Virus record (IMG/VR): IMGVR_UViG_3300046665_000548
Location: 186,001-250,000 of that record
DNA: 64,000 nucleotides
Strand: one strand, 5' to 3'
In this document: positions 2,457 to 62,317 of the stretch, one piece after another
Position numbering within the stretch: the first letter of the stretch is position 1
How the letters are laid out: each line of letters opens with the position of its first letter
The notes under the pieces: generated by a model
Seen by the model: the letters and a program-made list of their open reading frames with translations, nothing else
Database searches by the model: none
What the model was told of the DNA's origin: nothing
Translations under genes and position numbers: made by a program

Positions 2457-2843
2457 ATGCGTTTGGATGAAATGTTTTTGCCAGAAGAAGGCCGTATCGT
2501 TAAGGGCGTCAACACGACCTGCGATGTCGGCCCTAACGAGATCGCCATTCAATCATCAAAATTCCGGCTCGGCGTAACCAAGAACGGCATTCCAATTCGC
2601 GTGTTCAATAAAACGCATCCTCGCGACATGCTAGTCAGCGAAGCTACGCTCCAGACCGAGGCGCTGGACATCACTACCCTGCATGACACGGCTACTCATA
2701 TCTTGGCGTTGATAAAGCAAGGCTGGACAGTCTCTGATGCAGTGCACGACGTGATGCAAGGGCTAAAGGGTAACTTCCCTAAAATGAAGGACCTGATCAC
2801 TGTCCTTCGTGGAATGGGCGTGATGGTGTCCAAGAGGAATTAA
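2457..2843 (+). CDS. Hypothetical late protein
   Basis: 128-aa ORF starting MRLDEMF, directly behind TAAATA. Confidence 0.65.
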   Translation: MRLDEMFLPEEGRIVKGVNTTCDVGPNEIAIQSSKFRLGVTKNGIPIRVFNKTHPRDMLVSEATLQTEALDITTLHDTATHILALIKQGWTVSDAVHDVMQGLKGNFPKMKDLITVLRGMGVMVSKRN

Positions 2844-3778
2844 TCCTCGCGTCCTTTACGCACGGCCAAATCGAGCGGGTTATTGCAAGTAGGCCGGGTA
2901 CAGATCACGCCTTCGGTTGGCTTCTCGAAATCTTCGTCTTGGATCGTACCAAGCTTGCCACCGACGCGACACCAGCCTCCCCTAATGGTTCCATCCTGGT
3001 CTACCACAAGCTGATCCACACCGATCCGGCAAGCCATACCCGTGAACGAGTTTCGCTTCTTCATGATGATATCGTACGAGTGATGGAAGGGCTCTATCGT
3101 CCCGTCGTCCTGCTCAATAAAATGGTCTGAGGTTTGGACAGTGGGAGCACTCATTGTGCTTTGAAACTTAGCCATCTGCGCTTCCGAGTAAGGCAGAAGA
3201 TGCTTCCTGGTTGTATGATCCTGGAAAAGTAACTGGATGTCCGTGTACAAATGCGGGTGCCGGGCACGAAATTCGTCTCGATAGGAGAAAATCTCATCGA
3301 AATTGCCGGGCGTTACCGCGAAGGACACCATGAGACCAACAAACTCCTGCTTGAGGAGCTTCGCAACGGCCTCCAGGTGGTCCTGGGACAGCTTACCGTG
3401 ATGATATGTCAGAGTGACGTGGCTGAGGTGCTGAGCGAGGCTCTTCCACCCTGCGAGGTCCAGAGAGCCGTTCGTCTTGATCTCGACAACAAAGCCATAA
3501 GACCGCATGTGTTCGCACAAGGCGGCCAGATCGCTATACTCAGTTGGCTCCCCGCCGACGAGTGAGACGCGGATCACGCGATTTGAATGTATCTTGTGGT
3601 GACGGTCGGCTATCCGATCAACAAAAAGCTTTGCCTTTCGGAGTTCAGGAAACGGATTAGTCCCAGTTCGAAAATGAGAGTGGCAGTAAGAACATCCGAA
3701 ATTGCAGGTATTCCCAAGGTTCCAGTCTACTGTAACCTCGAAAGCCTCTTCTCGTGATTTGGAATAGACACGTTTCAC
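2840..3778 (-). CDS. Radical SAM protein with C-terminal Cys-rich (SPASM/twitch-like) domain
   Basis: CNFGCSYC (CxxxCxxC), SLVGGEPT, and C-terminal CRIG...WC...C..C. The GTG start at 3778 is my estimate. Confidence 0.85.
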   Translation of the reverse strand: MKRVYSKSREEAFEVTVDWNLGNTCNFGCSYCHSHFRTGTNPFPELRKAKLFVDRIADRHHKIHSNRVIRVSLVGGEPTEYSDLAALCEHMRSYGFVVEIKTNGSLDLAGWKSLAQHLSHVTLTYHHGKLSQDHLEAVAKLLKQEFVGLMVSFAVTPGNFDEIFSYRDEFRARHPHLYTDIQLLFQDHTTRKHLLPYSEAQMAKFQSTMSAPTVQTSDHFIEQDDGTIEPFHHSYDIIMKKRNSFTGMACRIGVDQLVVDQDGTIRGGWCRVGGKLGTIQDEDFEKPTEGVICTRPTCNNPLDLAVRKGRED

Positions 3779-3791
3779 ATGTCTATTTACG

Positions 3792-4247
3792 TCAGGCTGC
3801 CAGAATATACTTACCGTAGAGCCCGACGAAATCCTTCCAGTTATGGACGGCTTTGGGGCTGAACACGACACGGTGAGTATTGAGGATTTCTCGCATGACA
3901 ACCACCGGAACCAATGCTTCGGGGGTGAAATGCAAGCGATCCAGGCCGAGTCTATCCGGGCCTTCGGAAAAAACAGCATGAATGCCCTGTATCATCAGGT
4001 CGTCACAGTCCATATCAACATCCATTCCGGAATACTGATCTAGAAGATACCTGATAAGTTCACAGATTTTACTGTTAAGAATCTGCTTTTGTTCTTCGGC
4101 TTTGCCGTGATCTTTGAATGCATGCCACGCTACGAGCACATCATTTGCTCGCGTCCGCGCCGTTTCATAGCCTATTTCAATGCTCACGGGCTCTAGCCCT
4201 CCCGCCAGACGCGGGCCGCATGTTCCATTGTGCATACCATAGTGCAT
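3792..4247 (-). CDS. Hypothetical protein (start uncertain)
   Basis: 151-aa ORF co-oriented with its neighbours. Confidence 0.5.
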   Translation of the reverse strand: MHYGMHNGTCGPRLAGGLEPVSIEIGYETARTRANDVLVAWHAFKDHGKAEEQKQILNSKICELIRYLLDQYSGMDVDMDCDDLMIQGIHAVFSEGPDRLGLDRLHFTPEALVPVVVMREILNTHRVVFSPKAVHNWKDFVGLYGKYILAA

Positions 4248-4376
4248 TCGTCAAGCCTAATGAGTCCAATTTTTCTATCCGACAACAACTCCTATATTCC
4301 GACATCGTTCCGCCAAATAGTAAAAAAGCCTCCGGGTTTCCCCGAAGGCTCTATATGGGGGACAAGTCAGAGCCGA

Positions 4377-14577: not shown

Positions 14578-16074
14578 ATGAGCCGATCAGCCCTGAGGGT
14601 ATTGCCCTCTCACAAACAATTTGTCCTGGCTCCTTCTTCACAAGCTCTCGGGACTAGCTTTTCGATTATGAAGACTCCGCATTCTAACCGCGCAGTGGAC
14701 CTCGCTAGCTCACAAGACGCCCCGTGGTTCGGTGATATCCTCGATGCTATCCCAGTCGCGGTCTGTAGGACCGACGCCAAGGGACGGCTAACCTATCTCA
14801 ACCAAGCTGCTGCTGATTTTGCCGGTATGGAGTCTAAATTAGGCGACACGCTTTGGAATGGTTTGCACAAAATTTACACCATGGCCGGTTTGCCTATTAC
14901 TCTTAAAAATTGCCCGATGGCAGTTTCTTTGAAGGAAGGAAGGGCGATACATGGGGCCGAAGCTCAATGCCAGCGCAAAGATGGCAGCCTGTTTCCTGTT
15001 CTCGTCTATTCAACGCCAATTTTCGACCGGCACGGGAAAGTTACTGGCGCGGTCCATATGCTTGTGGATGTCAGCGAACGTCATGCAACTTCCCGGTTTC
15101 TTACCCTTGCAGAGAAGCGTCTTCAGACAACGTATGATGTCGTGAGCGTTGGTATTGCCGAAACCGATGGGGCGGGACGTTTTTTGAACGCTAACCAGCG
15201 CGTCATAGACAACACCGGCCTTAGCCTAGATCAACTCAAAAACATGACGTTTTTCGATCTCTGTTCTCCCGAGGATCGCAACATCGAGCGTGAAAATTAC
15301 GAAAACCTGATCAAGGGCGACATCCTCAGCTACACTCTGGAAAGAAAGACCGCATTCACCCAAAATCTTTGGTTTCGGGTGACGACCAACGCGGTATGCG
15401 ATGACCACGGTCGGTTTATGTACGCGGTAAGGGTTTCGAGCGACATCACGAAACGCATGAAAGCAGAGGAAAAGCAGAGACTTCTGCTTAACGAATTGAA
15501 CCATCGTGTGAAAAACACTTTGGCGACGATTCAATCCATTGCGTTTCAGACCGCAAGAGCTACCACGGAACCAAAGGAATTCAAAAAAGCTTTCGAAGGA
15601 AGGCTTCTTGGCATCTCGCAAACTCACGATCTCCTCACGTCATCGGGATGGGAGGGGGCAACTCTGGCCGATGTGGTTCGAGCCGAGCTTATGCCATTTC
15701 ACGGCGAAGACACTCTGAGATGGGTCATGAGCGGGCCATCCGTAAATCTGGTTCCGGCATCGGTTGTTTCACTTGGTATGGTGATCCACGAACTAGCCAC
15801 CAACGCGATCAAATACGGCGCGCTGTCTGATGCGGACGGACAGGTGGACGTGACGTGGAATTTTACCAGAAAAGGACCAGAGGGGCGACGGCTGAAGCTT
15901 CGATGGATCGAGTTTGACGGCCCACCGGTCGTCAAGCCAACGCGCCAGGGCTTTGGTTCGAAGTTGTTTCGAAGCCTAGCTCGTCAACTTGATGCCAAGT
16001 TGGATGTCGAGTACGCACCGAGTGGAGTCCGTTGTTTGCTCGACATCCCGGTCGAGTCAATCACTGCGACCTAA
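14578..16074 (+). CDS. PAS-PAS-HWE histidine kinase (start may be downstream)
   Basis: ELNHRVKNTLA H-box, HELATNAIKYGALS N-box, RWIEFDGP (WxE) and GFGS G-box; two PAS/PAC domains. Confidence 0.92.
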   Translation: MSRSALRVLPSHKQFVLAPSSQALGTSFSIMKTPHSNRAVDLASSQDAPWFGDILDAIPVAVCRTDAKGRLTYLNQAAADFAGMESKLGDTLWNGLHKIYTMAGLPITLKNCPMAVSLKEGRAIHGAEAQCQRKDGSLFPVLVYSTPIFDRHGKVTGAVHMLVDVSERHATSRFLTLAEKRLQTTYDVVSVGIAETDGAGRFLNANQRVIDNTGLSLDQLKNMTFFDLCSPEDRNIERENYENLIKGDILSYTLERKTAFTQNLWFRVTTNAVCDDHGRFMYAVRVSSDITKRMKAEEKQRLLLNELNHRVKNTLATIQSIAFQTARATTEPKEFKKAFEGRLLGISQTHDLLTSSGWEGATLADVVRAELMPFHGEDTLRWVMSGPSVNLVPASVVSLGMVIHELATNAIKYGALSDADGQVDVTWNFTRKGPEGRRLKLRWIEFDGPPVVKPTRQGFGSKLFRSLARQLDAKLDVEYAPSGVRCLLDIPVESITAT

Positions 16075-16460: not shown

Positions 16461-16896
16461 GAGCATAGGCGTTGGGTCCAAACTCAACCCCTTGATCGAA
16501 CCAATCAGAGGTCCTGCCAAAGCCCATTCTCTCGTAATATGGCATCGCGCTCTGACGCGGGATCGTCCAAAGGTTCGCACATTGGTGAGCGACGGCGCTG
16601 TTCTCTAGGGCGTTCATTAGAGCCCGCCCATACCCCCGGCCGGTAACTTGGGGATCGACCCACACACCACGGCTCCTGAACCATCCAGGGGCCGTTTGAA
16701 ACCCACTAATCACGCCAACGATTTCCTGGTTCTCTTCAGCGACGAAGAAGACCGGCTTATATTTGTAGATGTCCATGTCGTAGCCGCCGAGATAGGCCAT
16801 CGAACTTATAGGTTTGATTGGCGTCTCTCGGCCCGGCCACAGCTTGTCTCGCCAGAACGGCAAGACTGTATCAAAATCAGATTCGCGAACGATCAC
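16384..16896 (-). CDS. GNAT-family acetyltransferase
   Basis: RGVWVDPQVTGRGYGRAL and YYERMGF. Confidence 0.85.
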   Translation of the reverse strand: MIVRESDFDTVLPFWRDKLWPGRETPIKPISSMAYLGGYDMDIYKYKPVFFVAEENQEIVGVISGFQTAPGWFRSRGVWVDPQVTGRGYGRALMNALENSAVAHQCANLWTIPRQSAMPYYERMGFGRTSDWFDQGVEFGPNAYALKQMGNVSCSFRDEPRRSAFPLLNP

Positions 16897-17831
16897 TGAC
16901 TCTCGCCGGGGAGAGTCTTGCGGTACTGGACAAAACCAGAAAAGTTTCCGTGCAGTTCTCCGAGTACCCAGGCATTTTCGCCTTCAACGAATCTATCAGG
17001 GAATGCCTGATGCTCGGCCGGGGAGGCGTGCAGCGGGACCGCATCCAAAAGCCTATCGTACAAGCCTACGTCCTTCTCGAATGTAGTCTCCGCACCATCA
17101 TGAAGCTTGTAGCTGGTGCGCGCGCAACGGGCGACGCTGACCCGAATAAGAAGATCAGTGACATGATCGGCCACGTACGGGTTTATAGTCAGCGCGTAGG
17201 TTTGGTTTGCAACCGCCTCCCTAGCCGCAACAATGTCATCCTCTCGAACGTATGGTAGGTGCCACTGGTCATATTCGAGTTGATTGGGTACTGATTCTTG
17301 ATGAGCCGCATACATCGCATCAGCAAGAGCTTTGATTTCAGGCTGAGCGTCTTCGTGACGGCGTAGTGCGTAAAAGTTTGACCAGTTGGTCGAGGTAATA
17401 CACACGTTCATATGCATGAACGGTTCGAGAATACGGTTGACTATCTGCTTGTGATATCCAGCACCATCAAAAGCACGGGCTACCTCAACGGCCTTGTCTC
17501 TAGCACGAAGCCATGCTTCGAGATGTGTATAAGGTCCCTGTGAACATGCACAGGCAGAGTCGCCCGGAAGAAAGATTGCGGCGTCATGCTCTTCTTTCGC
17601 CTGCATCCCCGGAATGTTCTTTCCCCAATGAATTGGCATCGCTGGATCGAGAAGAACGTCTTCGACAACCTTTTTGACGGGGATTGCGCGAGAGCTTGAT
17701 GAGTTTCTGGAAAACACTCGATGAGTCATCAGTTCCCCATGTATAAAACGGGGATACCGAACCTGCATCGTCGTGATACGCTCACCCAAAGGGGAACGGC
17801 TGTCGCAAATTATCTTTGCTAAAATTGTCAT
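16893..17831 (-). CDS. thyX: FAD-dependent thymidylate synthase
   Basis: RFIHGELMTHRVFSRNSSSSRAIP (RHRxxSxxxxSxR-like), LRRHEDAQPEI, LHASPAEH. Confidence 0.9.
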   Translation of the reverse strand: MTILAKIICDSRSPLGERITTMQVRYPRFIHGELMTHRVFSRNSSSSRAIPVKKVVEDVLLDPAMPIHWGKNIPGMQAKEEHDAAIFLPGDSACACSQGPYTHLEAWLRARDKAVEVARAFDGAGYHKQIVNRILEPFMHMNVCITSTNWSNFYALRRHEDAQPEIKALADAMYAAHQESVPNQLEYDQWHLPYVREDDIVAAREAVANQTYALTINPYVADHVTDLLIRVSVARCARTSYKLHDGAETTFEKDVGLYDRLLDAVPLHASPAEHQAFPDRFVEGENAWVLGELHGNFSGFVQYRKTLPGESQ

Positions 17832-17877
17832 GAAATGTCCTGAATAAGAAATTGGTAATTGTAGTAGCGAAAGATAA

Positions 17878-18141
17878 TCAGCTAAATGCGCCGGTTTCTT
17901 TGAGGTAATCCTCTTCACCGGACATCTTCAAAAATGTGAGAAAGCGTTCCCACTCTGACTGAAGCGTTGGATTTTCGAGTATCTGCTTTTGGAGATCGTT
18001 ATAGAACCTAGCAGGCATCCTCAATCTTTCGATGTCGCGATACTGCTGATCTAATTTCTGTTGCAACTGAGCGTTATCCGCGCGAAGCTTTGAAATAAGC
18101 TCTGCCTGCTTTTCAATCATCATGTCGCTCTGGTCACGCAT
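17878..18141 (-). CDS. Coiled-coil hypothetical protein
   Basis: Heptad-rich 87-aa ORF. Confidence 0.6.
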   Translation of the reverse strand: MRDQSDMMIEKQAELISKLRADNAQLQQKLDQQYRDIERLRMPARFYNDLQKQILENPTLQSEWERFLTFLKMSGEEDYLKETGAFS

Positions 18142-20884: not shown

Positions 20885-22084
20885 TCAATACATGTTGAAG
20901 TTGGCGACTTTTAGTCCATCGCCGTCAATTCGTAAAGCCGCAGATGACAATCGGCCGCCTTTTCCGGAGCCCGTGTCGAGGAAGATCGTGTTACCGCCGT
21001 TGCTGTTGACGACCGTCATTGGCTTGGCTGTTGAACGAATGTCATGGCCAACGATGACAGTCATATCGGCAGGAACATTCTCCGTCCAAGTGTAACGACG
21101 TGCTGGGCGTTCTTCATTATAGTTCGCATCGAATTCTCCAAAGAGCGCCCAGGTTTCTAATTCTTTTGCAGTTGCCGATCCCGTCCAGAAACCTGGATGT
21201 ACCCCAGCGTGAGTGAAAAGAATGTTGCCGATCACTCGCCAATGACTTGACCTACTGACGAGACCTTTGAACCGCCCCTGCCAGCGCTTTCTGGCGGGCA
21301 ATCCCAATGATCCTAGGGCGTCCGTGGTGACCTTGTTGCCGTCGCTCAGTCGAACAGACGTGCGACCTCGCTCAATCTGATTGATCCATCTCATGATCTT
21401 TCGTTCATGATTACCAAGGATCATCTCACCCTGGCCGCGCATAACAACGCGATAGACCTCATCAGCGACTTCCAGCGTGTCGGAGCCGTAATCGATCACA
21501 TCACCCAGGAAGATCATGTAATGGTTTCGAGATCGAGCCCAGTCCAACGCGCTCAACAGAGATTGATACATCCCGTGAACGTCCCCAATGACGGTGATGC
21601 CATTCCAGTTCGCTTTGAGGCTTTCCAGATCGGGCTTTGTTTTGTCTACAAGCGACGGCTGATGAATTCTCCAGTCAATGACCTCGGCCAGTCCGTCGCC
21701 ACGAAGCAAGTCTTTTTCAGCCGCGTAGAAACGCTGCACGGATTGTTCGTCCGCTCCAGCAGGATCACAAAGGAAGTAGAAAACCGGAACACCAATATCG
21801 CTTCCCAATCGCGCGAGAGACATTCGGTCTTCCCGTCGAAGATTAGGAGCGTCAACAACAACGCGTTCGCCAAGATCAAGCTTCACCTGAATGCGGTGCC
21901 TGATCTCAGCGAAAACAATCGAATTGATTTCTGGTTTACTTTTCTCACCTACGAGATTGTAGGTCACATTGGCAGCACTAAGAATCTCGTAATCGGGGAA
22001 ATAACGAGCAAGTGTTTGCTCTCGATTTACTTGAGATGGACTTACCGCAATTACTAAAGAATGAGAAGGAACAACTTTTTGCAT
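20885..22084 (-). CDS. Polynucleotide kinase-phosphatase-like protein: degenerate AAA_33 kinase plus intact calcineurin-like phosphoesterase
   Basis: GDVHG, GDVIDYG, GNHE, THAG, VGHD and LDTG motifs; the P-loop reads VSPSQVNRE. Confidence 0.8.
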   Translation of the reverse strand: MQKVVPSHSLVIAVSPSQVNREQTLARYFPDYEILSAANVTYNLVGEKSKPEINSIVFAEIRHRIQVKLDLGERVVVDAPNLRREDRMSLARLGSDIGVPVFYFLCDPAGADEQSVQRFYAAEKDLLRGDGLAEVIDWRIHQPSLVDKTKPDLESLKANWNGITVIGDVHGMYQSLLSALDWARSRNHYMIFLGDVIDYGSDTLEVADEVYRVVMRGQGEMILGNHERKIMRWINQIERGRTSVRLSDGNKVTTDALGSLGLPARKRWQGRFKGLVSRSSHWRVIGNILFTHAGVHPGFWTGSATAKELETWALFGEFDANYNEERPARRYTWTENVPADMTVIVGHDIRSTAKPMTVVNSNGGNTIFLDTGSGKGGRLSSAALRIDGDGLKVANFNMY

Positions 22085-26065: not shown

Positions 26066-26953
26066 TCAAGCGTTGCGTTTCATCTGCTTGTATCGACGGT
26101 CGTAAAAATCGAGCTTCTGCTCGTCAAAATTGGCGTTGGACGCCCGCATCTTTCCGCCATCCAGGAATAGCTCTGTCGCCCGAGCACGGTCCATGAAGGT
26201 CGATGCTTTGTCATCGACCCTCGGCCCCCAACCGAGACGGAGCAGAAAATTCAGAATACCGTCCGGATCATAGCCACGATCACGGTAATCGAGCAGGCTA
26301 GCCGCGCCGTCGCGCTTTGCCATTTTCTTGTTGGCCTTGAAGATCAAACCAACGTGCGCAAATTTAGGAATGTCCAGCGGGTTATCCGAGGCGTGGTTCA
26401 GCGCGGAAAAGATCGCAACCTGCTTAGCGGTATTCGCGATATGGTCGGTGCCACGGATGATGAAATTCACCTCCAGGTCCCAATCATCAACGATAGACGC
26501 GAACTGATAGGTGGCCTGTCCTAGCTTATCGCCGCCGCGCACCAGACATAGCCGTCCGTCGATCTCCTCAACCGCTTTGTCGGAAACCTGAATGTCGCCA
26601 GCGATCTCATCGCGCCAAACACGAGGCATGAACGGCTGCCAAGACAGCATGATCGCCCCATTGTCGGCGGTCGTGGCAAAGCCAGCGTCAAGAAGACGCC
26701 TAGCATAGGCGCTGTAAATCGGACCGCGCTCAGACTGGCGCACGAAACGATCCCAGTCCAGCCCAAGCCATTTCAGACCGTCAAAGATCGGCTGCTCGAC
26801 CTCAACCATATTCCTGTCGGCATCGGTATCGTCCATTCGCAAAATGAACTGACCGCCCGAAGCCTTTGCGGCGAGCCAATTGAAATAAGCCGTACGGGCC
26901 GTCCCGATATGCATCATGCCGGTCGGTGATGGTGCAATGCGCGTCTTGTACAT
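26066..26953 (-). CDS. Truncated glutamyl-tRNA synthetase-like protein (catalytic core only)
   Basis: RIAPSPTG, HIGT (HIGH), LRMDDTD, IRGTDH, KMAKRDG (KMSKS-like). It ends at 295 aa with no anticodon-binding domains. Confidence 0.9.
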   Translation of the reverse strand: MYKTRIAPSPTGMMHIGTARTAYFNWLAAKASGGQFILRMDDTDADRNMVEVEQPIFDGLKWLGLDWDRFVRQSERGPIYSAYARRLLDAGFATTADNGAIMLSWQPFMPRVWRDEIAGDIQVSDKAVEEIDGRLCLVRGGDKLGQATYQFASIVDDWDLEVNFIIRGTDHIANTAKQVAIFSALNHASDNPLDIPKFAHVGLIFKANKKMAKRDGAASLLDYRDRGYDPDGILNFLLRLGWGPRVDDKASTFMDRARATELFLDGGKMRASNANFDEQKLDFYDRRYKQMKRNA

Positions 26954-31780: not shown

Positions 31781-32707
31781 TTAAGCGGCCATCTGCTGGA
31801 GATCGTCTCCGTCCTGCTCGCCGCCATCCTCCGTGGGCGCATCCTTGAGGGCGAGGCCACGGAGATAGTCTGCTGCCTTCTGTGCGGCGCTGGCGGCCCG
31901 CATAAAGGCCCGGTCGTCCTTTTCCAGCACGCCGATCCAGGTCTCGATGTATCCGGCGTGGCGGAGATCGCCGTCATAATCGAACTCGGCACAGAGGAAC
32001 GCGGAGGTCAGTTCGGCCACAAGCTCTTCCAGAGCATAGCCAGAATCACCGAACTTGTTCTTCAAGTCGCGGTCGAGCCGCTTCTTGTTGCCGGTCCAGT
32101 GACCAAGCTCGTGGAAAAGCGTCGCGTAATAGTGGTCGCGAGACTTGAACGCGCCATAGGCGGGCATACCAATATCATCGCGCTTGGTGCTGTACGAGGC
32201 CAGACCCTGATTTTCGCGGATTACCGCGCCGGTTGACTTGATGAAACCGTCAGCGAGTTCATCGCGCTCGGCCGTATTGAGCGGAGCCTTGCCGACGAAA
32301 AGCTTCTCGGGCAGGCCATCGCACTGCGCGATATTGAAGACCCGATAGCCCTTCACGACGAAGCGCTTTTCGTCTTCTTCGGTCGAAGTCTTGGCCTTCT
32401 TCACATAGGTCTTGGTGAACATGATCATGGTGGACTTTTCGCCCTTGCGGACGTGGCCGCCGAGCGAGACCGCCTGATCATAGGTGAGCCACATGGGGGT
32501 GACGAAACCGGCCGCTGCGGCAGCCATCCAGAGAAGCACAACGTTACCGCCCGAATAGGGACGACCGCTGACAGCATTTACCGGCTGGTGAGTGCCAGTA
32601 CCGGCCTCGCGCCACGGCTTCACCCACGGAGCAGCGCCGCTGCGCAGTTCGTCCAGAATGCGGTCGGTGATCGCCTTGTGAACATTGAACTTCTCGGTCT
32701 CGGCCAT
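31781..32707 (-). CDS. ardC: ArdC-family ssDNA-binding antirestriction protein (DUF1738 plus zincin-like domain)
   Basis: PWVKPW, NAVSGRPYSGGN, WLTYDQA..LGGHVRKGEK, FHELGHWTG, YALEELVAE; early promoter upstream. Confidence 0.9.
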   Translation of the reverse strand: MAETEKFNVHKAITDRILDELRSGAAPWVKPWREAGTGTHQPVNAVSGRPYSGGNVVLLWMAAAAAGFVTPMWLTYDQAVSLGGHVRKGEKSTMIMFTKTYVKKAKTSTEEDEKRFVVKGYRVFNIAQCDGLPEKLFVGKAPLNTAERDELADGFIKSTGAVIRENQGLASYSTKRDDIGMPAYGAFKSRDHYYATLFHELGHWTGNKKRLDRDLKNKFGDSGYALEELVAELTSAFLCAEFDYDGDLRHAGYIETWIGVLEKDDRAFMRAASAAQKAADYLRGLALKDAPTEDGGEQDGDDLQQMAA

Positions 32708-32771
32708 GCGTCGCTCCAGCGCTTGTGAATCGATGATCACAAACTACCAGAATTTGGACGTTCGTCAAGCC

Positions 32772-33039: not shown

Positions 33040-33116
33040 TGGTAGGCGCGGTGGGATTCGAACCCACGTGACCAGGATTTTAAGTCCCGTACGGTAACCA
33101 ACTACGTCACGCGCCC
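33040..33116 (-). tRNA. tRNA-Leu(TAA) with a short (class I) variable region
   Basis: GGGCGCG/CGCGCCT acceptor stem, CGGGA-CTTAAAA-TCCTG anticodon arm, 5-nt variable loop GTCAC, GTGGG-TTCGAAT-CCCAC T arm, ACCA. Confidence 0.85.
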
Positions 33117-39264: not shown

Positions 39265-39837
39265 TTACAGCAATCCACGAAAAGTCAGGCTGATTCGCGG
39301 CTTCGCCTCGAAATCCGCCTTCGGGATACGATGCTGGTGCGTATCCTGCATTCCTGCACGCATCAGGGCGAGCGATCCCGATTCGAGCATCAGCGTTTCG
39401 ACCGGGCCAAATTCACCCTTGTCGCCCTTGCCAGTGCTCTTGCGCAGAACTTTACGGAACTGAATGTTCCGCCCCTGCCCGACCGTGAGGATAGCGATAG
39501 GCAGCGAGTGATCGATACCCGGATCATCATCCTCGTGCCAGCCAAGCCAATCGCGCTTTCCTTCGTAGCCATTCAGAAAACAGCCACTGAAAAATCCGTG
39601 CCCGCCAGCCTTGAGCCGGTCGCGAGCAACGTCGATCAGGACATGCGAGGGACGCGGATGATACGTACGCTCACCTGCGCCGCGCCCATACGTGTACGAG
39701 CGACCAAGCGTGTTGGTCCAATACTCGCGACGCGGCGCGTCGGGTCGCTGCTCCCAATCTAGTTCTCCCCACAAGCGGGTGAACCATGCATCGGGGTGTT
39801 CAGCAAATCCGGGTATGTATGTGACCGGAGCATCCAT
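39265..39837 (-). CDS. alkB: AlkB-family 2OG-Fe(II) dioxygenase
   Basis: LNGY...WHEDDD (HxD), HRIPK, RISLTFR. Confidence 0.9.
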   Translation of the reverse strand: MDAPVTYIPGFAEHPDAWFTRLWGELDWEQRPDAPRREYWTNTLGRSYTYGRGAGERTYHPRPSHVLIDVARDRLKAGGHGFFSGCFLNGYEGKRDWLGWHEDDDPGIDHSLPIAILTVGQGRNIQFRKVLRKSTGKGDKGEFGPVETLMLESGSLALMRAGMQDTHQHRIPKADFEAKPRISLTFRGLL

Positions 39838-44612: not shown

Positions 44613-44687
44613 TGGAGGTTGAGGTGGGGATCGAACCCACTCGTGGAGGTTTTGCAGACCTCAGCGTTCCCATTTCGCCACTCAACC
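44613..44687 (-). tRNA. tRNA-Cys(GCA)
   Basis: GGTTGAG/CTCAACC, GAGGT-CTGCAAA-ACCTC, U73, CCA. Confidence 0.95.
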
Positions 44688-44688
44688 G

Positions 44689-44764
44689 TCAACGCGACAG
44701 GATTCGAACCTGTGATCCCCAGTCTCCCGAACTGGTAGGGACGGCCAGACTCCCCTACGCGCTG
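44689..44764 (-). tRNA. Atypical tRNA-Pro(GGG) (C33, A37, G38; no encoded CCA)
   Basis: CAGCGCG/CGCGTTG, A73, CCAGT-TCGGGAG-ACTGG, ACAGG-TTCGAAT-CCTGT. Confidence 0.75.
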
Positions 44765-44772
44765 TAACTCAA

Positions 44773-44979
44773 TTAGTCTAGCTTGAACCGCTCTGCGACA
44801 GGCAGACGGCGATAGCGCTCGATAACTCCGCTATAGAATTTGATAGCTTCGAGCGCGATCTCTCTGACTTCAACTAGGCTGTCGGCTTCGACGCAAAAGT
44901 AAGGCGAACTACTCGACATAGCCACCCAACGGCCCGGTTCGTATTCTCTGACGGTGACCGTCACGATGTTATCCGTCAT
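44773..44979 (-). CDS. HicB-like antitoxin-fold small protein inside the tRNA array
   Basis: VTVREYEPGRWVAMS...FCVEADSLVEVREIALEAIKFY resembles the HicB N-terminal domain; GAAGGGG RBS. Confidence 0.5.
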   Translation of the reverse strand: MTDNIVTVTVREYEPGRWVAMSSSSPYFCVEADSLVEVREIALEAIKFYSGVIERYRRLPVAERFKLD

Positions 44980-45000
44980 GACGGTCCCCTTCAAAACCTA

Positions 45001-45077
45001 TGGAGTCGGCGGCAGGACTTGAACCTGCATACTCCGGGTTTGCAACCCGGCTGACTAGCCATTCTCAACACGCCGAC
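45001..45077 (-). tRNA. tRNA-Cys(GCA), second copy
   Basis: GTCGGCG/CGCCGAC, CCGGG-TTGCAAA-CCCGG, U73, CCA. Confidence 0.92.
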
Positions 45078-45078
45078 G

Positions 45079-45153
45079 TGGTGACGGAACCTGGGATCGA
45101 ACCAGGGACATGCGCCGTATGAAAGCGCCGCTCTACCGCTGAGCTATACCGCC
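45079..45153 (-). tRNA. tRNA-Met(CAT), elongator-type (Ile2 not excluded)
   Basis: GGCGGTA/TTCCGTC, GCGCT-TTCATAC-GGCGC, ACCA. Confidence 0.88.
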
Positions 45154-45160
45154 GAAAGCA

Positions 45161-45246
45161 TTGTTCGTGACCCACCGGACTACTCAAAGGACCGGGAGGC
45201 TGTCCTTGTCCATATGAGAGTTTGCCTCCCGATGGGTCTCGAACAA
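45161..45246 (-). ncRNA. Unassigned structured element within the tRNA array
   Basis: Nested stems TTGTTCG/CGAACAA, GACCCA/TGGGTC and CGGGAGGC/GCCTCCCG. Confidence 0.35.
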
Positions 45247-45261
45247 CGCTCTATTAACTTG

Positions 45262-45338
45262 TGGTCAGGGTGGCAGGCTACGACCCTGCGATTTCCTCTT
45301 CCCGAAAGAGGCGGATTACCAGACTTTCCCACACCCTG
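45262..45338 (-). tRNA. tRNA-Pro(CGG) with non-canonical T loop (GTCGTAG)
   Basis: CAGGGTG/CACCCTG, CCTCT-TTCGGGA-AGAGG, ACCA. Confidence 0.9.
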
Positions 45339-45352
45339 TAACTCTGTATGCT

Positions 45353-45438
45353 TGGTGCGGCCAAGAGGACTCGAACCTCCACTCTTTTTGGGAACTACCA
45401 CCTCAAGGTAGCGCGTCTACCAGTTCCGCCATGGCCGC
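45353..45438 (-). tRNA. tRNA-Leu(GAG)
   Basis: GCGGCCA/TGGCCGC, CTACC-TTGAGGT-GGTAG, long variable arm, ACCA. Confidence 0.95.
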
Positions 45439-45462
45439 ATTCGTGGTGTTAGATGTGCTCTG

Positions 45463-45537
45463 TCAGGCGTCTCGGATTCGAACCGAGGATACTCCTGTAC
45501 CCAAAACAGGCGGATTACCAGACTTTCCCAACGCCTG
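45463..45537 (-). tRNA. tRNA-Pro(TGG) embedded in a 16-bp acceptor-stem extension
   Basis: CAGGCGT/ACGCCTG, CCTGT-TTTGGGT-ACAGG; no CCA at the normal position; flanks pair (45448-45463 with 45538-45553). Confidence 0.9.
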
Positions 45538-45590
45538 ACAGAACACATCTAACGCACGCGACTAGAGTAATCTCTTGCTCCAGTCAGTAT

Positions 45591-45678
45591 TGGTGGGCGG
45601 AGTAGGACTCGAACCTACGTAGGTTTTGAAGCCGGGAGGTTTACAGCCTCCGCCGATTGCCGCTCCGGTCACCCGCCC
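45591..45678 (-). tRNA. tRNA-Tyr(GTA)
   Basis: GGGCGGG/TCCGCCC, GGAGG-CTGTAAA-CCTCC, long variable arm, ACCA. Confidence 0.95.
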
Positions 45679-46376: not shown

Positions 46377-47873
46377 ATGTCCATTGATGATCTTTTGAAG
46401 CACTTCGAGATTTCGTATCCCACGTCCGAAGCAACGCTGCAAAGCGTATCCCCGATATGGGGCGGGGCGATTACCAGCGTCGAAGAGACGAACATGGAAC
46501 AGTTCGTCACCATCATGGAAGATGCCCAGACCGCGTACGAGCAGTGGCGGAACGTCCCGGCTCCTCGTCGGGGCGAACTGATCCGTATCTTTGGAAATCT
46601 CCTTCGAGAGAACAAAGAACAGCTTGGAATGCTCGTCACCGTCGAGAGCGGCAAGATCGTCTCGGAAGGTCTCGGTGAGGTTCAGGAAATGATCGACATC
46701 TGCGATTTCGCGGTTGGTCTCTCGCGGCAGCTATATGGGCTGACCATCGCGACCGAGCGCCGCGACCATCGCATGATGGAGACGTGGCACCCAATGGGCG
46801 TGGTCGGGATCATCTCGGCCTTCAATTTCCCGGTCGCTGTATGGGCCTGGAACGCCGCCCTGGCGCTTGTTTGCGGAAACGCGTGTGTATGGAAGCCTTC
46901 CGAGAAGACCCCTCTCACGGCCCTCGCTACGCAGCGATTATTCCTTCAGGCGTGTGAGCAGTTCGGATCGGATGCTCCGGTTGGCCTATCCGGGCTGATC
47001 ATTGGTGATCATGCAATCGGTAAGCATCTCGTGACGCATCGTCATACGAAAGTCATTTCAGCAACCGGTTCGACTCGGATGGGTAGGCAGGTTGCTGCGG
47101 CAGCGTCGGGTGATTTCAAACGCACCATTCTGGAGCTTGGCGGCAACAACGCGGCGATTGTCTCGATGGCCGCCGATCTTGATCTTGCCATTCGTGGTAT
47201 CGCGTTTGCTGCCATGGGAACGGCTGGACAGCGCTGCACGACGCTTCGTAGGCTCTTTGTGGATGTGACCGTCTATACGCCGTTCCTAGAGCGCTTGAAG
47301 GCAGCCTATTCGAGCGTGAAGATTGGCGACCCTCGCGAGCCCGACACGCTCATTGGCCCGCTGATCGACAGGAATGCCTTCGGAATGATGCAGATGGCTC
47401 TGGAGCAAGCTCGCAGCGAAGGCGGGACCGTTCATGGTGGCGAAGAAGTGGAGGTTACCGGCCGCGCTGGTATCTACGTCAGACCGGCTCTGGTTGAGAT
47501 GCCGGGACAAACTCCCATCATGCTTCGGGAGACCTTCGCGCCTATTCTGTACGTCACCGCGTATAGGTATTTGGAAGATGCCATTCAGATGAATAACGCG
47601 GCCGAACACGGCTTGTCGTCTTCGATCTTCACGAATGACTTGCGTGAGGCCGAACTGTTTCTATCCGCTGCCGGTTCGGATTGCGGCATCGCCAACGTCA
47701 ACATCGGTCCATCTGGCGCAGAGATCGGCGGCGCATTCGGCGGTGAGAAGGATACCGGAGGAGGTCGCGAGTCTGGTTCTGATGCGTGGAAGGCGTACAT
47801 GCGTCGCGCCACGAACACTATCAACTATGGCAGTGATCTCCCGCTAGCCCAGGGCGTCAAGTTCACAGTATAG
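46377..47873 (+). CDS. Aldehyde dehydrogenase family 7 (alpha-aminoadipic semialdehyde/P6C dehydrogenase-like)
   Basis: ISAFNFPVAVW, LELGGNN, GTAGQRCT, ETFAPI, GAEIGGAFGGEKDTGGGRESGSD. Confidence 0.92.
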   Translation: MSIDDLLKHFEISYPTSEATLQSVSPIWGGAITSVEETNMEQFVTIMEDAQTAYEQWRNVPAPRRGELIRIFGNLLRENKEQLGMLVTVESGKIVSEGLGEVQEMIDICDFAVGLSRQLYGLTIATERRDHRMMETWHPMGVVGIISAFNFPVAVWAWNAALALVCGNACVWKPSEKTPLTALATQRLFLQACEQFGSDAPVGLSGLIIGDHAIGKHLVTHRHTKVISATGSTRMGRQVAAAASGDFKRTILELGGNNAAIVSMAADLDLAIRGIAFAAMGTAGQRCTTLRRLFVDVTVYTPFLERLKAAYSSVKIGDPREPDTLIGPLIDRNAFGMMQMALEQARSEGGTVHGGEEVEVTGRAGIYVRPALVEMPGQTPIMLRETFAPILYVTAYRYLEDAIQMNNAAEHGLSSSIFTNDLREAELFLSAAGSDCGIANVNIGPSGAEIGGAFGGEKDTGGGRESGSDAWKAYMRRATNTINYGSDLPLAQGVKFTV

Positions 47874-47882
47874 TATAGTAAC

Positions 47883-47966
47883 GCGGGCGTGCCGGAACCG
47901 GTAGACGGAAGGGACTTAAAATCCCTCGCCTCGTGCGTGCGGGTTCGAGTCCCGCCGCCCGCACCA
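47883..47966 (+). tRNA. tRNA-Leu(TAA), canonical class II
   Basis: GCGGGCG/CGCCCGC, AGGGA-CTTAAAA-TCCCT, variable arm, ACCA. Confidence 0.95.
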
Positions 47967-50752: not shown

Positions 50753-51368
50753 TCACGCCCCCATAGCAAGCATTAGTCGATCCACGCCGACCGCCCATCC
50801 TACACCTTCCTGGTAAGTTCCGCCACCAGCAACTTGCTTTTGAGCGCCTAAACTTTCCACGGCGGCTTCGAAACCGTCCTCGACATAGTAGGATAGACCT
50901 CGTTTTACCGAATCGCTCCAAGTATAGGCCATGCCAAGCTTATCCAAGCAAAGTCGCAAAAGTTGTTTTGCTTGATCTGATTCGGCCGAACCAAGCATCT
51001 CGATGCCGAACTGGGTGAATTCGCGGTAGCGGCCCTTCTGGGGGCGCTCGTAGCGGTAGCAGCGCTGCACATAGAAGACGTTGCGGGTCTTCATGCGCTT
51101 GGACCAATCGTCCCGCCACGTCTCCTGAACGAGCCCGGTAACTTCAGGAATCAGGCACACGTTGCGTTCGCCCTTATCCTGGAAACGCCACATCATCTGG
51201 GAATTCTCGGCCCCGACTTTTTCATCAAAGGTGGCGCTCTCCCAAATGCTTGGGACAATAATTTCCTCGAATTCAGCGTCGATGAAGACACTCCCGAAGA
51301 GTATTGACAACCTTATTGTAGAGCCGGGCCTCGTCGCCGGACAAAATTCGTGTTCCTCTTAACATCAT
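50753..51368 (-). CDS. Minimal histidyl-tRNA synthetase-like catalytic core, interrupted by a +1 frameshift near 51299-51293
   Basis: Frame 1: MMLRGTRILSGDEARLYNKVVNTLR (stop at 51273). Frame 2: VFIDAEFEEIIVP (motif 1), YRYERPQKGRYREFTQ (motif 2), RGLSYY, GGG.Y, GWAVGVDRL (motif 3). No insertion or anticodon domain. Confidence 0.8.
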
Positions 51369-51824: not shown

Positions 51825-51900
51825 TGGTACCAGTTGGGAGAATCGAACTCACCGTATTCCGATCCACAGTCGGACGCTACTACCATTGAGCTAAACTGGC
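51825..51900 (-). tRNA. tRNA-His(GTG), alphaproteobacterial type (no G-1, G1:U72, A73)
   Basis: GCCAGTT/AACTGGT-A-CCA; TCCGA-CTGTGGA-TCGGA; T at position -1. Confidence 0.92.
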
Positions 51901-62227: not shown

Positions 62228-62317
62228 TGGCGGAGCAGGAGGGATTCGAACCCTCGGTACGGTTACCCGTACAACACCTTTCCAGGGTGTCACAATCGGC
62301 CACTCTGTCACCGCTCC
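62228..62317 (-). tRNA. tRNA-Ser(GGA)
   Basis: GGAGCGG/CTGCTCC, ACACC-CTGGAAA-GGTGT, long variable arm, GCCA. Confidence 0.95.

What the first reader, a model, noticed from the sequence alone, without database searches (positions are those of the whole stretch)
26066..26953. Stand-alone GluRS catalytic core lacking anticodon and zinc regions
Seen: HIGH and KMSKS-like motifs and a GluRS-type N-terminus (ARTAYFNWL). The Cys/Zn part of the acceptor-binding insertion is deleted, and the protein ends right after FDEQKLDFY, where the anticodon domains begin. Established: truncated paralog GluQ-RS glutamylates queuosine of tRNA-Asp instead of acylating a 3' end. Inference: an anticodon-blind glutamyl transferase that charges or modifies tRNAs, tRNA mimics or another acceptor. 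Two truncated synthetases of different classes in one window suggest a theme.
Basis: partly seen in the sequence, partly recalled or inferred. Interest (0 to 1): 0.6.

Follow-up and report, generated by a model that had tools for sequence, protein, structure and literature searches.

The report
Phage minimal glutamyl-tRNA synthetase core
A 608-kb phage carries an intact, strongly conserved 295-residue glutamyl-tRNA synthetase that lacks the anticodon-reading half and the zinc module. It belongs to a phage-borne family of hundreds of such enzymes, and I found no report that anyone has tested their activity.

Summary
Window 26066-26953 (-) is an intact 295-aa ORF: the catalytic half of a bacterial-type GluRS, with HIGH = HIGT and KMSKS = KMAKR. 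It lacks the Zn module (E. coli GltX 98-132) and everything after about residue 310.

It is not a recent truncation. More than 120 proteins of 282-388 aa (all but one at most 325) share 52-86% identity. An ESM Atlas cluster has 382 members, 71% viral. dN/dS against the closest relative is 0.06. Neither this phage nor 14 related viral records encode a GluRS anticodon domain.

It is not GluQRS. It misses the GluQRS model cut-offs, has no Cys cluster, and carries the GltX residue at 8 of 9 GltX/GluQ-discriminating columns, including E. coli Arg266. The family is monophyletic on a long stem, and its position relative to GluQ is unresolved.

In four divergent lineages the gene lies within 800 bp of tRNA-Glu genes. 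The family gained conserved basic residues.

Best reading (about 0.5): an anticodon-independent GluRS that glutamylates the 3' end of tRNA-Glu and perhaps tRNA-Gln. No biochemistry exists.

A cultured handle exists: Methylobacterium indicum VL1 phage-plasmid pVL1_2.

The parts
26066..26953 (-). Gene for a 295-aa stand-alone GluRS catalytic core: Rossmann fold, reduced acceptor-binding insertion and stem-contact fold, ending in a short basic tail
   Evidence: ORF. PF00749 183 bits. gltX_bact TIGR00464 254 bits, below its 290 cut-off. AF2 model pLDDT 94.7. Best folds are bacterial GluRS, TMq 0.82-0.87.
26900..26911 (-). HIGH motif, here H15-I-G-T18 (the H-phi-G-T type)
   Evidence: H15, G17 and T18 are invariant in 40 family members. 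DNA read. PMC3927822 (read) reports H-phi-G-T in an outlier alpha/gamma-proteobacterial GluRS group and H-phi-G-N in the tRNA-Gln-specific GluRS2.
26666..26671 (-). Junction (residues 95/96) where the 35-residue Zn-binding module of E. coli GltX (98-132) is absent
   Evidence: Alignments A1 and A2. The same two-stretch Pfam pattern appears in all 14 related viral records.
26312..26326 (-). KMSKS-type motif K210-M-A-K-R214. A212 aligns with E. coli GltX Ser239. The rest of the family has KMSKR.
   Evidence: K210 and K213 are invariant; S212 and R214 are nearly invariant in the family. Residue mapping.
26069..26296 (-). C-terminal stem-contact-fold region (about residues 220-295). It holds invariant R239 (= E. 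coli Arg266), family-specific basic residues (K249, R258, R270, R286, K289) and a tail of net positive charge.
   Evidence: The role of Arg266 is quoted from PMC3927822.
26066..26068 (-). TGA stop at the point where full-length GluRS continues into the anticodon-binding domains
   Evidence: No PF19269 match anywhere in the genome.

Best explanation
The gene encodes an active, anticodon-independent minimal glutamyl-tRNA synthetase of a phage-borne family. Shown: the ORF is intact, the family is large and uniformly short, it is under strong purifying selection, and the ATP- and glutamate-site residues are invariant and of the GltX type. Inferred: it activates L-glutamate with ATP and transfers it to the 3'-terminal adenosine of tRNA-Glu, recognising the acceptor and D-arm side of the tRNA through the remaining acceptor-binding strands and the stem-contact fold. 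Family-specific basic residues would compensate for the lost anticodon domains. Because the domains that read the anticodon are gone, it is probably also non-discriminating towards tRNA-Gln. The product would then depend on the host GatCAB, since the phage has no GatB. Its likely role is to keep phage or host tRNA-Glu (and tRNA-Gln) charged during infection, alongside the phage's own AspRS, SerRS and ThrRS and its 57 tRNAs.
For: 1. Conservation. More than 120 homologues of 282-388 aa (all but one at most 325) share 52-86% identity and carry PF00749 only. IMG/VR holds 34 short members, while full-length phage GluRSs are all at 40% identity or less. The Atlas cluster has 382 members, 71% viral. 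dN/dS is 0.06 against the closest relative.
2. Active site. R5, A7, S9, H15, G17, D42, Y149, D156, D157, R167, H171, K210 and K213 are invariant in 40 members. 31 columns are shared with both GltX and GluQ.
3. GltX-type states. The family has the GltX residue at 8 of 9 columns that separate GltX from GluQ, and the GluQ residue at none. These include H171 and R214. R239, invariant in the family, aligns with E. coli Arg266, which PMC3927822 describes as essential for glutamylation efficiency.
4. Scores and fold. gltX model 254 bits against GluQRS models of 74-137 bits. 40% identity to E. coli GltX against 27% to GluQ. TMq 0.82-0.87 to GluRS against 0.65-0.72 to GluQRS.
5. Context. tRNA-Glu genes lie within 800 bp in L113, L114, L117, L118, L128 and L158, directly upstream on the same strand in the first four, and at -2 kb in L115. 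The proteins of these lineages are only 41-76% identical. 17 of 104 tRNAs within 10 kb are Glu.
6. Charge. 11 basic positions are conserved in the family but not in GltX, mostly in the C-terminal third. Median pI is 8.5 against 5.8 for the GltX core.
7. Precedent. A C-truncated E. coli GluRS is reported to be specific for tRNA-Glu (Dubois et al. 2009, title cited in PMC3927822).
8. It is the only GluRS-like gene, and no anticodon domain is present, in this phage and in 14 related viral records.
Against: No biochemical or expression data exist, and no RNA run holds the locus. The family sits on a long stem branch of 1.69 substitutions per site, which would also fit a change of function. The AU test does not reject grouping the family with GluQ: p = 0.79, and the constrained tree scored higher than the quick free tree. 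In this phage the gene lies about 311 kb from its tRNA-Asp/Glu cluster. The cultured Methylobacterium phage-plasmid pVL1_2 has the gene but no tRNA-Glu, Gln or Asp at all, so a dedicated phage-tRNA partner cannot be general. The Zn module that modulates acceptor-arm binding in E. coli GluRS is missing. The universally conserved Glu of the RIEDTD motif is Asp in the whole family. The query itself has Ala in KMSKS and a near-neutral pI of 6.9. From memory, the truncated E. coli enzyme is far less efficient than the full-length one.
Confidence: 0.5

Rival explanations
1. A GluQRS-like RNA modifier. The enzyme activates glutamate without tRNA and esterifies a modified base or ribose inside a tRNA (such as queuosine-34 of tRNA-Asp) or another internal RNA site, retuning decoding during infection.
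For: It has the same truncated architecture and nearly the same end point as E. coli GluQ. The AU test does not reject a family+GluQ grouping. The long stem branch is compatible with neofunctionalisation. The phage has a tRNA-Asp.
Against: All GluQRS models score far below their cut-offs: 74-137 bits against 250-453. None of the 9 discriminating columns is GluQ-like. The Cys-rich module that GluQ keeps is absent. The fold is closer to GluRS. The phage has no TGT and no QueC above cut-off. The tRNA most often next to the gene is Glu, and Asp appears in only one locus.
Confidence: 0.12
2. A glutamyl transferase for a non-canonical acceptor. It charges tRNAs of other identities, a tRNA-like RNA such as the phage tmRNA, a small molecule or a protein, using only the shared CCA end or no RNA at all.
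For: All anticodon-reading parts and the Zn module are gone. The gene has no conserved protein neighbour, so no partner is visible. pVL1_2 has the gene without any Glu, Gln or Asp tRNA. The same phages carry other minimal synthetase fragments (HisRS-like 185 aa, GlyRS-like 252 aa) whose canonical activity is doubtful. The phage encodes a tmRNA.
Against: The tRNA-facing residues typical of proteobacterial GluRS are kept, notably R239 = Arg266 and the stem-contact fold. The tRNA-Glu adjacency recurs in four lineages. In E. coli the truncated GluRS stays tRNA-Glu-specific (title of Dubois 2009).
Confidence: 0.15
3. Half of a two-piece GluRS. The core needs a separate partner, either a diverged phage protein or the host enzyme's distal domain, that supplies anticodon recognition in trans.
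For: The title of Dubois 2009 states that the C-truncated E. coli enzyme is stimulated by its free distal domain. Many neighbouring ORFs have no known family.
Against: No PF19269 match at E <= 1 in this genome, nor at E <= 0.01 in 14 related viral records, four of them at least 93% complete. No gene family co-occurs with the core across 38 loci.
Confidence: 0.1
4. A non-catalytic binder or decoy. It sequesters tRNA-Glu, or absorbs a host factor that targets GltX, such as a HipA-type kinase acting on the KMSKS serine.
For: The query has Ala at the position of E. coli GltX Ser239. From memory, that is the HipA phosphorylation site.
Against: The rest of the family keeps Ser there. The full set of ATP- and Glu-binding residues is invariant, which a mere binder would not need.
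Confidence: 0.06
5. A decaying remnant of a full-length gltX with no function.
For: The anticodon domains are missing, and one IMG/VR relative (L134) is only 230 aa. A Variovorax megaplasmid copy is cut by an IS21 element.
Against: The length is uniform, 270-328 aa in 33 of the 34 short IMG/VR members, over identities down to about 35%. dN/dS is 0.06. The model is confident, pLDDT 94.7. The catalytic residues are invariant.
Confidence: 0.02

Closest known systems
Bacterial glutamyl-tRNA synthetase GltX (TIGR00464; structures 8i9i E. coli, 2cfo, 1j09), and in particular the engineered C-truncated E. coli GluRS of Dubois et al. 2009
   Same: It has the same fold over all 295 residues (TMq 0.82-0.87). 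It shares the HIGH and KMSKS motifs, the glutamate-site Arg, Tyr and Arg residues, the RGxDH motif, and the Arg266 equivalent. It ends where the engineered fragment ends, at about E. coli residue 310-314.
   Different: It has no anticodon-binding domains (PF19269) and no Zn module (E. coli 98-132). Asp replaces the conserved Glu in RIEDTD. It has gained basic residues and a basic tail. It scores below the curated gltX cut-off (254 against 290 bits) and forms a separate clade on a long stem. It is a natural, selected protein rather than a laboratory construct.
Glutamyl-queuosine tRNA-Asp synthetase GluQRS / YadB (TIGR03838; 1nzj, 4a91)
   Same: It is also a stand-alone GluRS-type catalytic core of about 300 aa without an anticodon domain. 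According to the 2022 review PMC9437257, GluQRS is the only characterised GluRS paralogue.
   Different: 27% identity against 40% to GltX. GluQRS models score 74-137 bits against cut-offs of 250-453. There is no Cys/Zn module. It has GltX residues at 8 of 9 discriminating columns, and the fold match is weaker (TMq 0.65-0.72). It is phage-borne rather than chromosomal.
Full-length GluRSs with a naturally short acceptor-binding insertion (Methylacidiphilum fumariolicum 8jpv, 448 aa)
   Same: 8jpv lacks the Zn-knuckle segment and aligns to the query in one stretch, query 4-289 on chain 11-291. Planctomycetia, Saccharibacteria and Parcubacteria GltX of 433-447 aa are short enough to suggest the same, though I did not align them across the junction.
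   Different: They keep the anticodon-binding domains. The family does not group with them specifically in the tree.
Full-length phage-encoded GluRS (PHROG 35649 and 12136; IMG/VR loci L140-L171)
   Same: They are carried by large phages, sometimes next to tRNA-Gln or tRNA-Glu genes.
   Different: They are 416-548 aa with anticodon domains and at most 40% identical to the query. PHROGs v4 has no family of its own for the short form.

Membership tests
Pfam PF00749 tRNA-synt_1c (GluRS/GlnRS catalytic domain) | Score above the gathering threshold (23.4 bits) | tested here: met
   183 bits, E 8.8e-54, in two stretches.
Glutamate--tRNA ligase GltX (NCBIfam TIGR00464, equivalog) | Whole-protein score at or above the curated cut-off (289.95 bits) | tested here: not met
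   254.1 bits. The match covers the profile only up to position 318 of 470.
Glutamate--tRNA ligase GltX | C-terminal anticodon-binding domains (PF19269) | tested here: not met
   The ORF stops at about E. coli residue 310. No PF19269 match in the whole phage genome or in 14 related viral records.
Glutamate--tRNA ligase GltX | Class I HIGH and KMSKS motifs and the glutamate-binding residues (Arg5, Ala7, Ser9, Tyr, and the Arg of IRG) | tested here: met
   HIGT and KMAKR in the query (KMSKR in the family). R5, A7, S9, Y149 and R167 are invariant. The assignment of roles to these residues comes from my memory of the T. thermophilus structures.
Glutamate--tRNA ligase GltX (proteobacterial type) | Arg266 (E. 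coli numbering), reported essential for glutamylation efficiency | tested here: met
   R239 is invariant in 40 members and lies in the LNFLLRLGW motif, which aligns with the E. coli motif (F236 = Y263 and W242 = W269). GluQ has Gln at that position. The role of the residue is quoted from PMC3927822.
Glutamate--tRNA ligase GltX | tRNA-dependent glutamate activation and 3'-aminoacylation of tRNA-Glu | not testable with these tools
   This needs ATP-PPi exchange and charging assays.
GluQRS / YadB (NCBIfam TIGR03838, NF004312-NF004315) | Score at or above the curated cut-offs (250-453 bits) | tested here: not met
   74-137 bits.
GluQRS / YadB | Catalytic core without an anticodon domain, about 300 aa | tested here: met
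   295 aa, with nearly the same C-terminal limit as E. coli GluQ.
GluQRS / YadB | Cys-rich Zn-binding segment in the insertion domain | tested here: not met
   The segment is absent. The only Cys in the query is C136.
GluQRS / YadB | GluQ-specific residue states (for example Leu in RGxDL and Gln after KLSK) | tested here: not met
   0 of 9 discriminating columns are GluQ-like and 8 of 9 are GltX-like, judged against 6 GluQ sequences only.
GluQRS / YadB | Placement inside the GluQ clade | tested here: inconclusive
   The six GluQ rows form their own clade (97*) and the family forms its own (100*). A sister relation between the two long branches is not rejected: AU p = 0.79.
GluQRS / YadB | Glutamylation of queuosine-34 of tRNA-Asp | not testable with these tools
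   This needs LC-MS of tRNA. The phage has no TGT or QueC of its own.

The most novel reading that the evidence does not exclude
The family is a third functional branch of the GluRS catalytic core, beside GltX and GluQRS. On this reading it is a phage tool that glutamylates acceptors without reference to the anticodon, such as non-cognate or damaged tRNAs, the phage tmRNA or another RNA or protein. Together with the co-occurring mini-HisRS and GlyRS-like fragments it would form a set of natural minimal synthetases that rewire or protect the tRNA pool during infection.
Probability: 0.15. Interest if true: 0.85.

Novelty: new variant of a known kind. Interest (0 to 1): 0.6.

Why it matters
GluRS is held to have begun as a catalytic core to which anticodon-binding domains were added later. 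Until now the only natural stand-alone core with a known activity is GluQRS, which does something other than aminoacylation.

A large, selected, phage-borne family of GltX-like cores would be a natural experiment. It could show how much tRNA identity a class I synthetase can read without the anticodon. It could show whether dropping the discriminating domains yields a built-in non-discriminating enzyme. It could also show what huge phages gain from carrying their own charging enzymes next to their tRNA arrays.

The work is practical. A member sits on a phage-plasmid of a cultured Methylobacterium, so the decisive assays are ordinary bench work.

Tried and rejected
- Split gene or frameshift: rejected. 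There is no PF19269 anywhere in the genome, the downstream ORF is unrelated, and the same stop position recurs across the family.
- Conserved partner gene: none. In an all-against-all comparison of ORFs within 10 kb in 38 loci, the only recurrent 'neighbour' was the antisense shadow ORF of the gene itself.
- Close relatives in isolated phages (INPHARED): none above 36% identity.
- Close relatives in 185,579 GTDB species genomes: the best hits are 31-40% identical and every complete ORF is full-length GltX.
- HipA-proof GluRS idea (Ala at the Ser239 position): not a family trait, since S212 is nearly invariant.
- GluRS2 (tRNA-Gln-specific) ancestry: the HIGH motif is H-phi-G-T, not the H-phi-G-N that PMC3927822 gives for GluRS2.
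- Phage-encoded transamidation: no GatB.
- Phage queuosine pathway: no TGT and no QueC above cut-off.
- Expression: the look-up of sequencing runs found only small DNA shares (at most 0.25 of the words), among them a soil and a rhizosphere metagenome, and no RNA holder.
- Rooted origin of the family: not resolved. The quick tree shows a polytomy, and the AU test favours neither placement.
- Literature: four further searches found no description of this family.
- Not run: the large representative search, because the word search and family scans had settled the family; complex prediction, because there is no candidate protein partner; a second structure prediction.

Full report
**What is there.** Window 26066-26953 (minus strand) is an uninterrupted 295-codon ORF, from ATG at 26953 to TGA at 26068-26066. 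Pfam assigns it to the GluRS/GlnRS catalytic domain PF00749 at 183 bits, in two stretches that skip about 60 profile positions. NCBIfam ranks the bacterial gltX model first, at 254 bits. That is below its curated cut-off of 290, and the match stops at profile position 318 of 470. The five GluQRS models score only 74-137 bits against cut-offs of 250-453. Aligned with E. coli GltX and GluQ fetched from MG1655, the protein lacks GltX residues 98-132, which form the C98/C100/C125/H127 zinc module, and everything after about residue 310. HIGH is HIGT, and KMSKS is KMAKR.

**Where it lies.** The window is bases 186,001-250,000 of a 607,744-bp IMG/VR virus record that CheckV rates complete. The genome has 57 tRNA genes, including three tRNA-Glu, four tRNA-Gln and one tRNA-Asp, plus a permuted tmRNA gene. 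It also encodes a full-length AspRS and SerRS, a ThrRS without its N-terminal part, and a 252-aa GlyRS-like piece. No GluRS anticodon-binding domain (PF19269) occurs in any frame at E <= 1. No second PF00749 gene exists, and there is no GatB. The gene sits in a run of small minus-strand ORFs. None of the neighbours is synthetase-related. They include a polynucleotide kinase/phosphatase-like protein, a VWA-like protein, a HicB-like C-terminal domain protein and a NUDIX hydrolase.

**Not a recent truncation.** The word-indexed protein search covered lengths of 162-516 aa, so full-length GluRS was eligible. Its best 120 hits were all 282-388 aa (all but one at most 325), at 52-86% identity and carrying PF00749 only. 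Several lie on contigs of 0.2-0.87 Mb. A scan of IMG/VR gave a bimodal picture. All 34 loci with short products have ORFs of 230-328 aa (33 of them 270-328), at 34-66% identity. All full-length phage GluRSs (416-548 aa) are at most 40% identical. The ESM Atlas holds a cluster of 382 members, 71% labelled viral. In 14 related viral records, four of them 93-100% complete, the short gene is the only PF00749 gene, shows the same two-stretch pattern, and is never accompanied by PF19269. dN/dS against the closest relative (86% identical protein, dS 1.24) is 0.06, and other pairs give 0.07-0.13.

**Is it an enzyme, and of which kind?**
- In 40 members the ATP- and glutamate-site residues are invariant: R5, A7, S9, H15, G17, T18, D42, Y149, D156, D157, R167, D170, H171, K210 and K213.
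- The AlphaFold model is confident (pLDDT 94.7, pTM 0.92). Its best matches are bacterial GluRSs (TMq 0.82-0.87). GluQRS matches at 0.65-0.72.
- I compared 35 GltX cores with 6 GluQ sequences. Nine columns separate the two groups cleanly. The family has the GltX residue at eight of them and the GluQ residue at none. These include the His of RGxDH and the Arg after KMSK.
- R239, invariant in the family, aligns with E. coli Arg266. PMC3927822 describes that residue as proteobacteria-specific and essential for glutamylation efficiency.
- The HIGH variant H-phi-G-T is the one that paper reports for an outlier alpha/gamma-proteobacterial GluRS group. It is not the H-phi-G-N of the tRNA-Gln-specific GluRS2.
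- Only five family-wide switches away from the GltX consensus were found: E41D, V100A, V153S, P202G and Y236F. From memory, GlnRS also has Asp at the first of these positions, so the change is chemically tolerated.
- Loss of the zinc module is not disqualifying on its own. The solved full-length GluRS of Methylacidiphilum (8jpv) aligns in a single stretch across the junction. Full-length GltX of Planctomycetia, Saccharibacteria and Parcubacteria are only 433-447 aa, short enough to suggest the same.

**Phylogeny.** In a tree of 82 catalytic cores the family is monophyletic (SH-aLRT 100) on a stem of 1.69 substitutions per site. GluQ forms its own clade (97). With GluQ as outgroup, the family joins an unresolved base of bacterial GltX. 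However, an AU test did not reject a tree that puts the family and GluQ on one side of a branch. The p-value was 0.79, and the constrained tree even scored 17.5 log-likelihood units above the quick free search. Both branches are long, so attraction between them is possible. I therefore claim only that this is a distinct clade, GltX-like in sequence states. I do not claim a resolved origin.

**Clues to the acceptor.**
- No protein-coding neighbour is conserved across 38 loci.
- tRNA genes do show a pattern. In L113, L114, L117 and L118, two to four tRNA-Glu genes lie 4-700 bp upstream on the same strand. In L115 they are 2 kb upstream, in L128 one lies 88 bp downstream, and in L158 one lies 788 bp upstream. 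The proteins of these loci are only 41-76% identical to each other.
- Of 104 tRNAs within 10 kb of a family gene, 17 are Glu. The loci are not independent, so I treat this as suggestive.
- The pattern does not hold everywhere. In the present phage the tRNA-Asp/Glu cluster is about 311 kb away.
- The 128-kb circular 'plasmid' pVL1_2 of Methylobacterium indicum VL1 is in fact a complete myovirus-type genome with ParA. It carries a 64%-identical member but only tRNA-Trp, Tyr, Met and Pro. In that phage the enzyme must act on host tRNA or on something else.
- Relative to GltX cores, the family has gained 11 conserved basic positions, mostly in the C-terminal stem-contact region, and a basic tail. 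Median pI is 8.5 against 5.8, although the query itself is 6.9. I read this as compensation for lost RNA-binding surface, which is inference.

**Mechanism proposed.** Shown: an intact, selected GltX-type active site in a protein with no anticodon-reading part. Inferred: glutamate is activated and transferred to A76 of tRNA-Glu, with recognition limited to the acceptor and D-arm side. This would match the engineered C-truncated E. coli GluRS, which its authors' title describes as specific for tRNA-Glu (cited in PMC3927822). Also inferred: without the discriminating domains it may charge tRNA-Gln too. The hints of an alphaproteobacterial host are an HWE histidine kinase, a permuted tmRNA (its link to that class is from memory) and the Methylobacterium relative. 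In such a host the product would feed the host GatCAB route, since by Table 1 of PMC3927822 most alphaproteobacteria lack GlnRS. I give this reading about 0.5. The rivals are listed separately: GluQ-like modification, another acceptor, a trans partner, a decoy, and a dead remnant.

**Novelty.** NCBI annotates members only as 'glutamate--tRNA ligase family protein'. PHROGs v4 has no family for the short form. A 2022 review of synthetase paralogues lists GluQRS as the only GluRS-derived one (PMC9437257). Four further literature searches found no description. I class it as a new variant of a known kind.

**The 'theme'.** The second truncated synthetase is at window 50753-51310 (-). It is 185 aa and matches the hisS model at 130 bits over profile positions 26-141 of 406. 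It lies 515 bp downstream of tRNA-His on the same strand. It too belongs to a conserved short family of 144-296 aa (most 145-215) at 57-90% identity. So these phages carry several minimal synthetase fragments, a point that deserves its own study.

**Limits.** No biochemistry and no transcript evidence exist. The residue roles come partly from my memory of the T. thermophilus and E. coli literature. Only six GluQ sequences were sampled, and the tree was a quick search. I did not run the large representative search, read laying or complex prediction.

Noticed in passing
window 50753-51310 (-), with tRNA-His at 51825-51900 (-): A 185-aa HisRS-like N-terminal fragment (hisS model 130 bits, profile 26-141 of 406; weaker hits to HisZ) lies just downstream of tRNA-His. 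It belongs to a conserved short family of 144-296 aa (most 145-215) at 57-90% identity. It is too short to be a complete class II catalytic domain..
   Followed up: partly
G000 genome 160116-162002, 168865-170151, 592053-593519, 590844-591602 (outside the window): The phage also encodes a full-length AspRS (764 bits), a full-length SerRS (470 bits), a ThrRS lacking the N-terminal part (488 aa) and a 252-aa GlyRS-like class II fragment..
   Followed up: partly
G000 genome: 57 tRNAs in 16 clusters; tmRNA at 576377-576796; tRNA(CUA) at 4091-4178 and 4180-4256; a tRNA with a 4-base anticodon (ggaa) at 1944-2020. The window holds 12 tRNAs, at 33040-33116, 44613-45678, 47883-47966, 51825-51900 and 62228-62317.: The phage has a near-complete tRNA set and a permuted tmRNA gene (tag ANDNVAVSEYALAA). 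From memory, the permuted type is typical of Alphaproteobacteria. There are two amber-reading tRNAs and one candidate four-base-anticodon tRNA. I did not check for stop-codon recoding..
   Followed up: no
window 26318-26320 (codon of A212): The query has Ala where E. coli GltX has Ser239 in KLSKR. From memory, that serine is the one phosphorylated by the HipA toxin. Other family members keep Ser, so this is a peculiarity of this phage and its closest kin at most..
   Followed up: partly
window 20885-22084 (-): A 399-aa protein combines an AAA_33 kinase-like N-terminus with a calcineurin-like phosphoesterase (PHROG 246, with a weaker hit to an RNA ligase PHROG). It resembles polynucleotide kinase/phosphatase RNA-repair enzymes, and it is syntenic in the closest relative, L004..
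   Followed up: no
window 14578-16074 (+): A phage-encoded PAS-PAS-HWE histidine kinase of 498 aa. From memory, HWE kinases are typical of Alphaproteobacteria, so this is a hint to the host and an unusual phage gene..
   Followed up: no
window 46377-47873 (+), 31781-32740 (-), 16893-17918 (-), 2840-3979 (-), 39265-39837 (-): Other annotated genes: an aldehyde dehydrogenase (423 bits) with a tRNA cluster upstream and tRNA-Leu directly downstream, an ArdC-like anti-restriction protein fused to a zincin peptidase, a ThyX-like protein, a radical SAM protein and a 2OG-Fe(II) oxygenase..
   Followed up: no
L174-L177 (NZ_AP024147.1, Methylobacterium indicum VL1 'plasmid pVL1_2', 128,167 bp, circular): The record filed as a plasmid is a complete tailed-phage genome. 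It has a terminase, capsid, sheath, tube, baseplate and tape measure, together with ParA, so it is a phage-plasmid. It carries a family member (WP_207183840.1) and only four tRNAs, and it offers a cultured system for testing the family..
   Followed up: yes
L005 (ENA contig k141_178484, 869,618 bp): A family member (P0091, 325 aa) lies 6 kb from a T4-type portal gene on an 870-kb contig. This is either an exceptionally large phage or a prophage in a chromosome fragment, and I did not resolve which..
   Followed up: no
L173 (Variovorax sp. SRS16 plasmid 2, 632521-633312): A 263-aa 'glutamate--tRNA ligase family protein' (44% identical over query residues 1-243) directly abuts an IS21 helper-ATPase gene, with an IS3 transposase gene 1.5 kb upstream. 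It looks like a copy cut by insertion sequences rather than a member of the intact family..
   Followed up: partly
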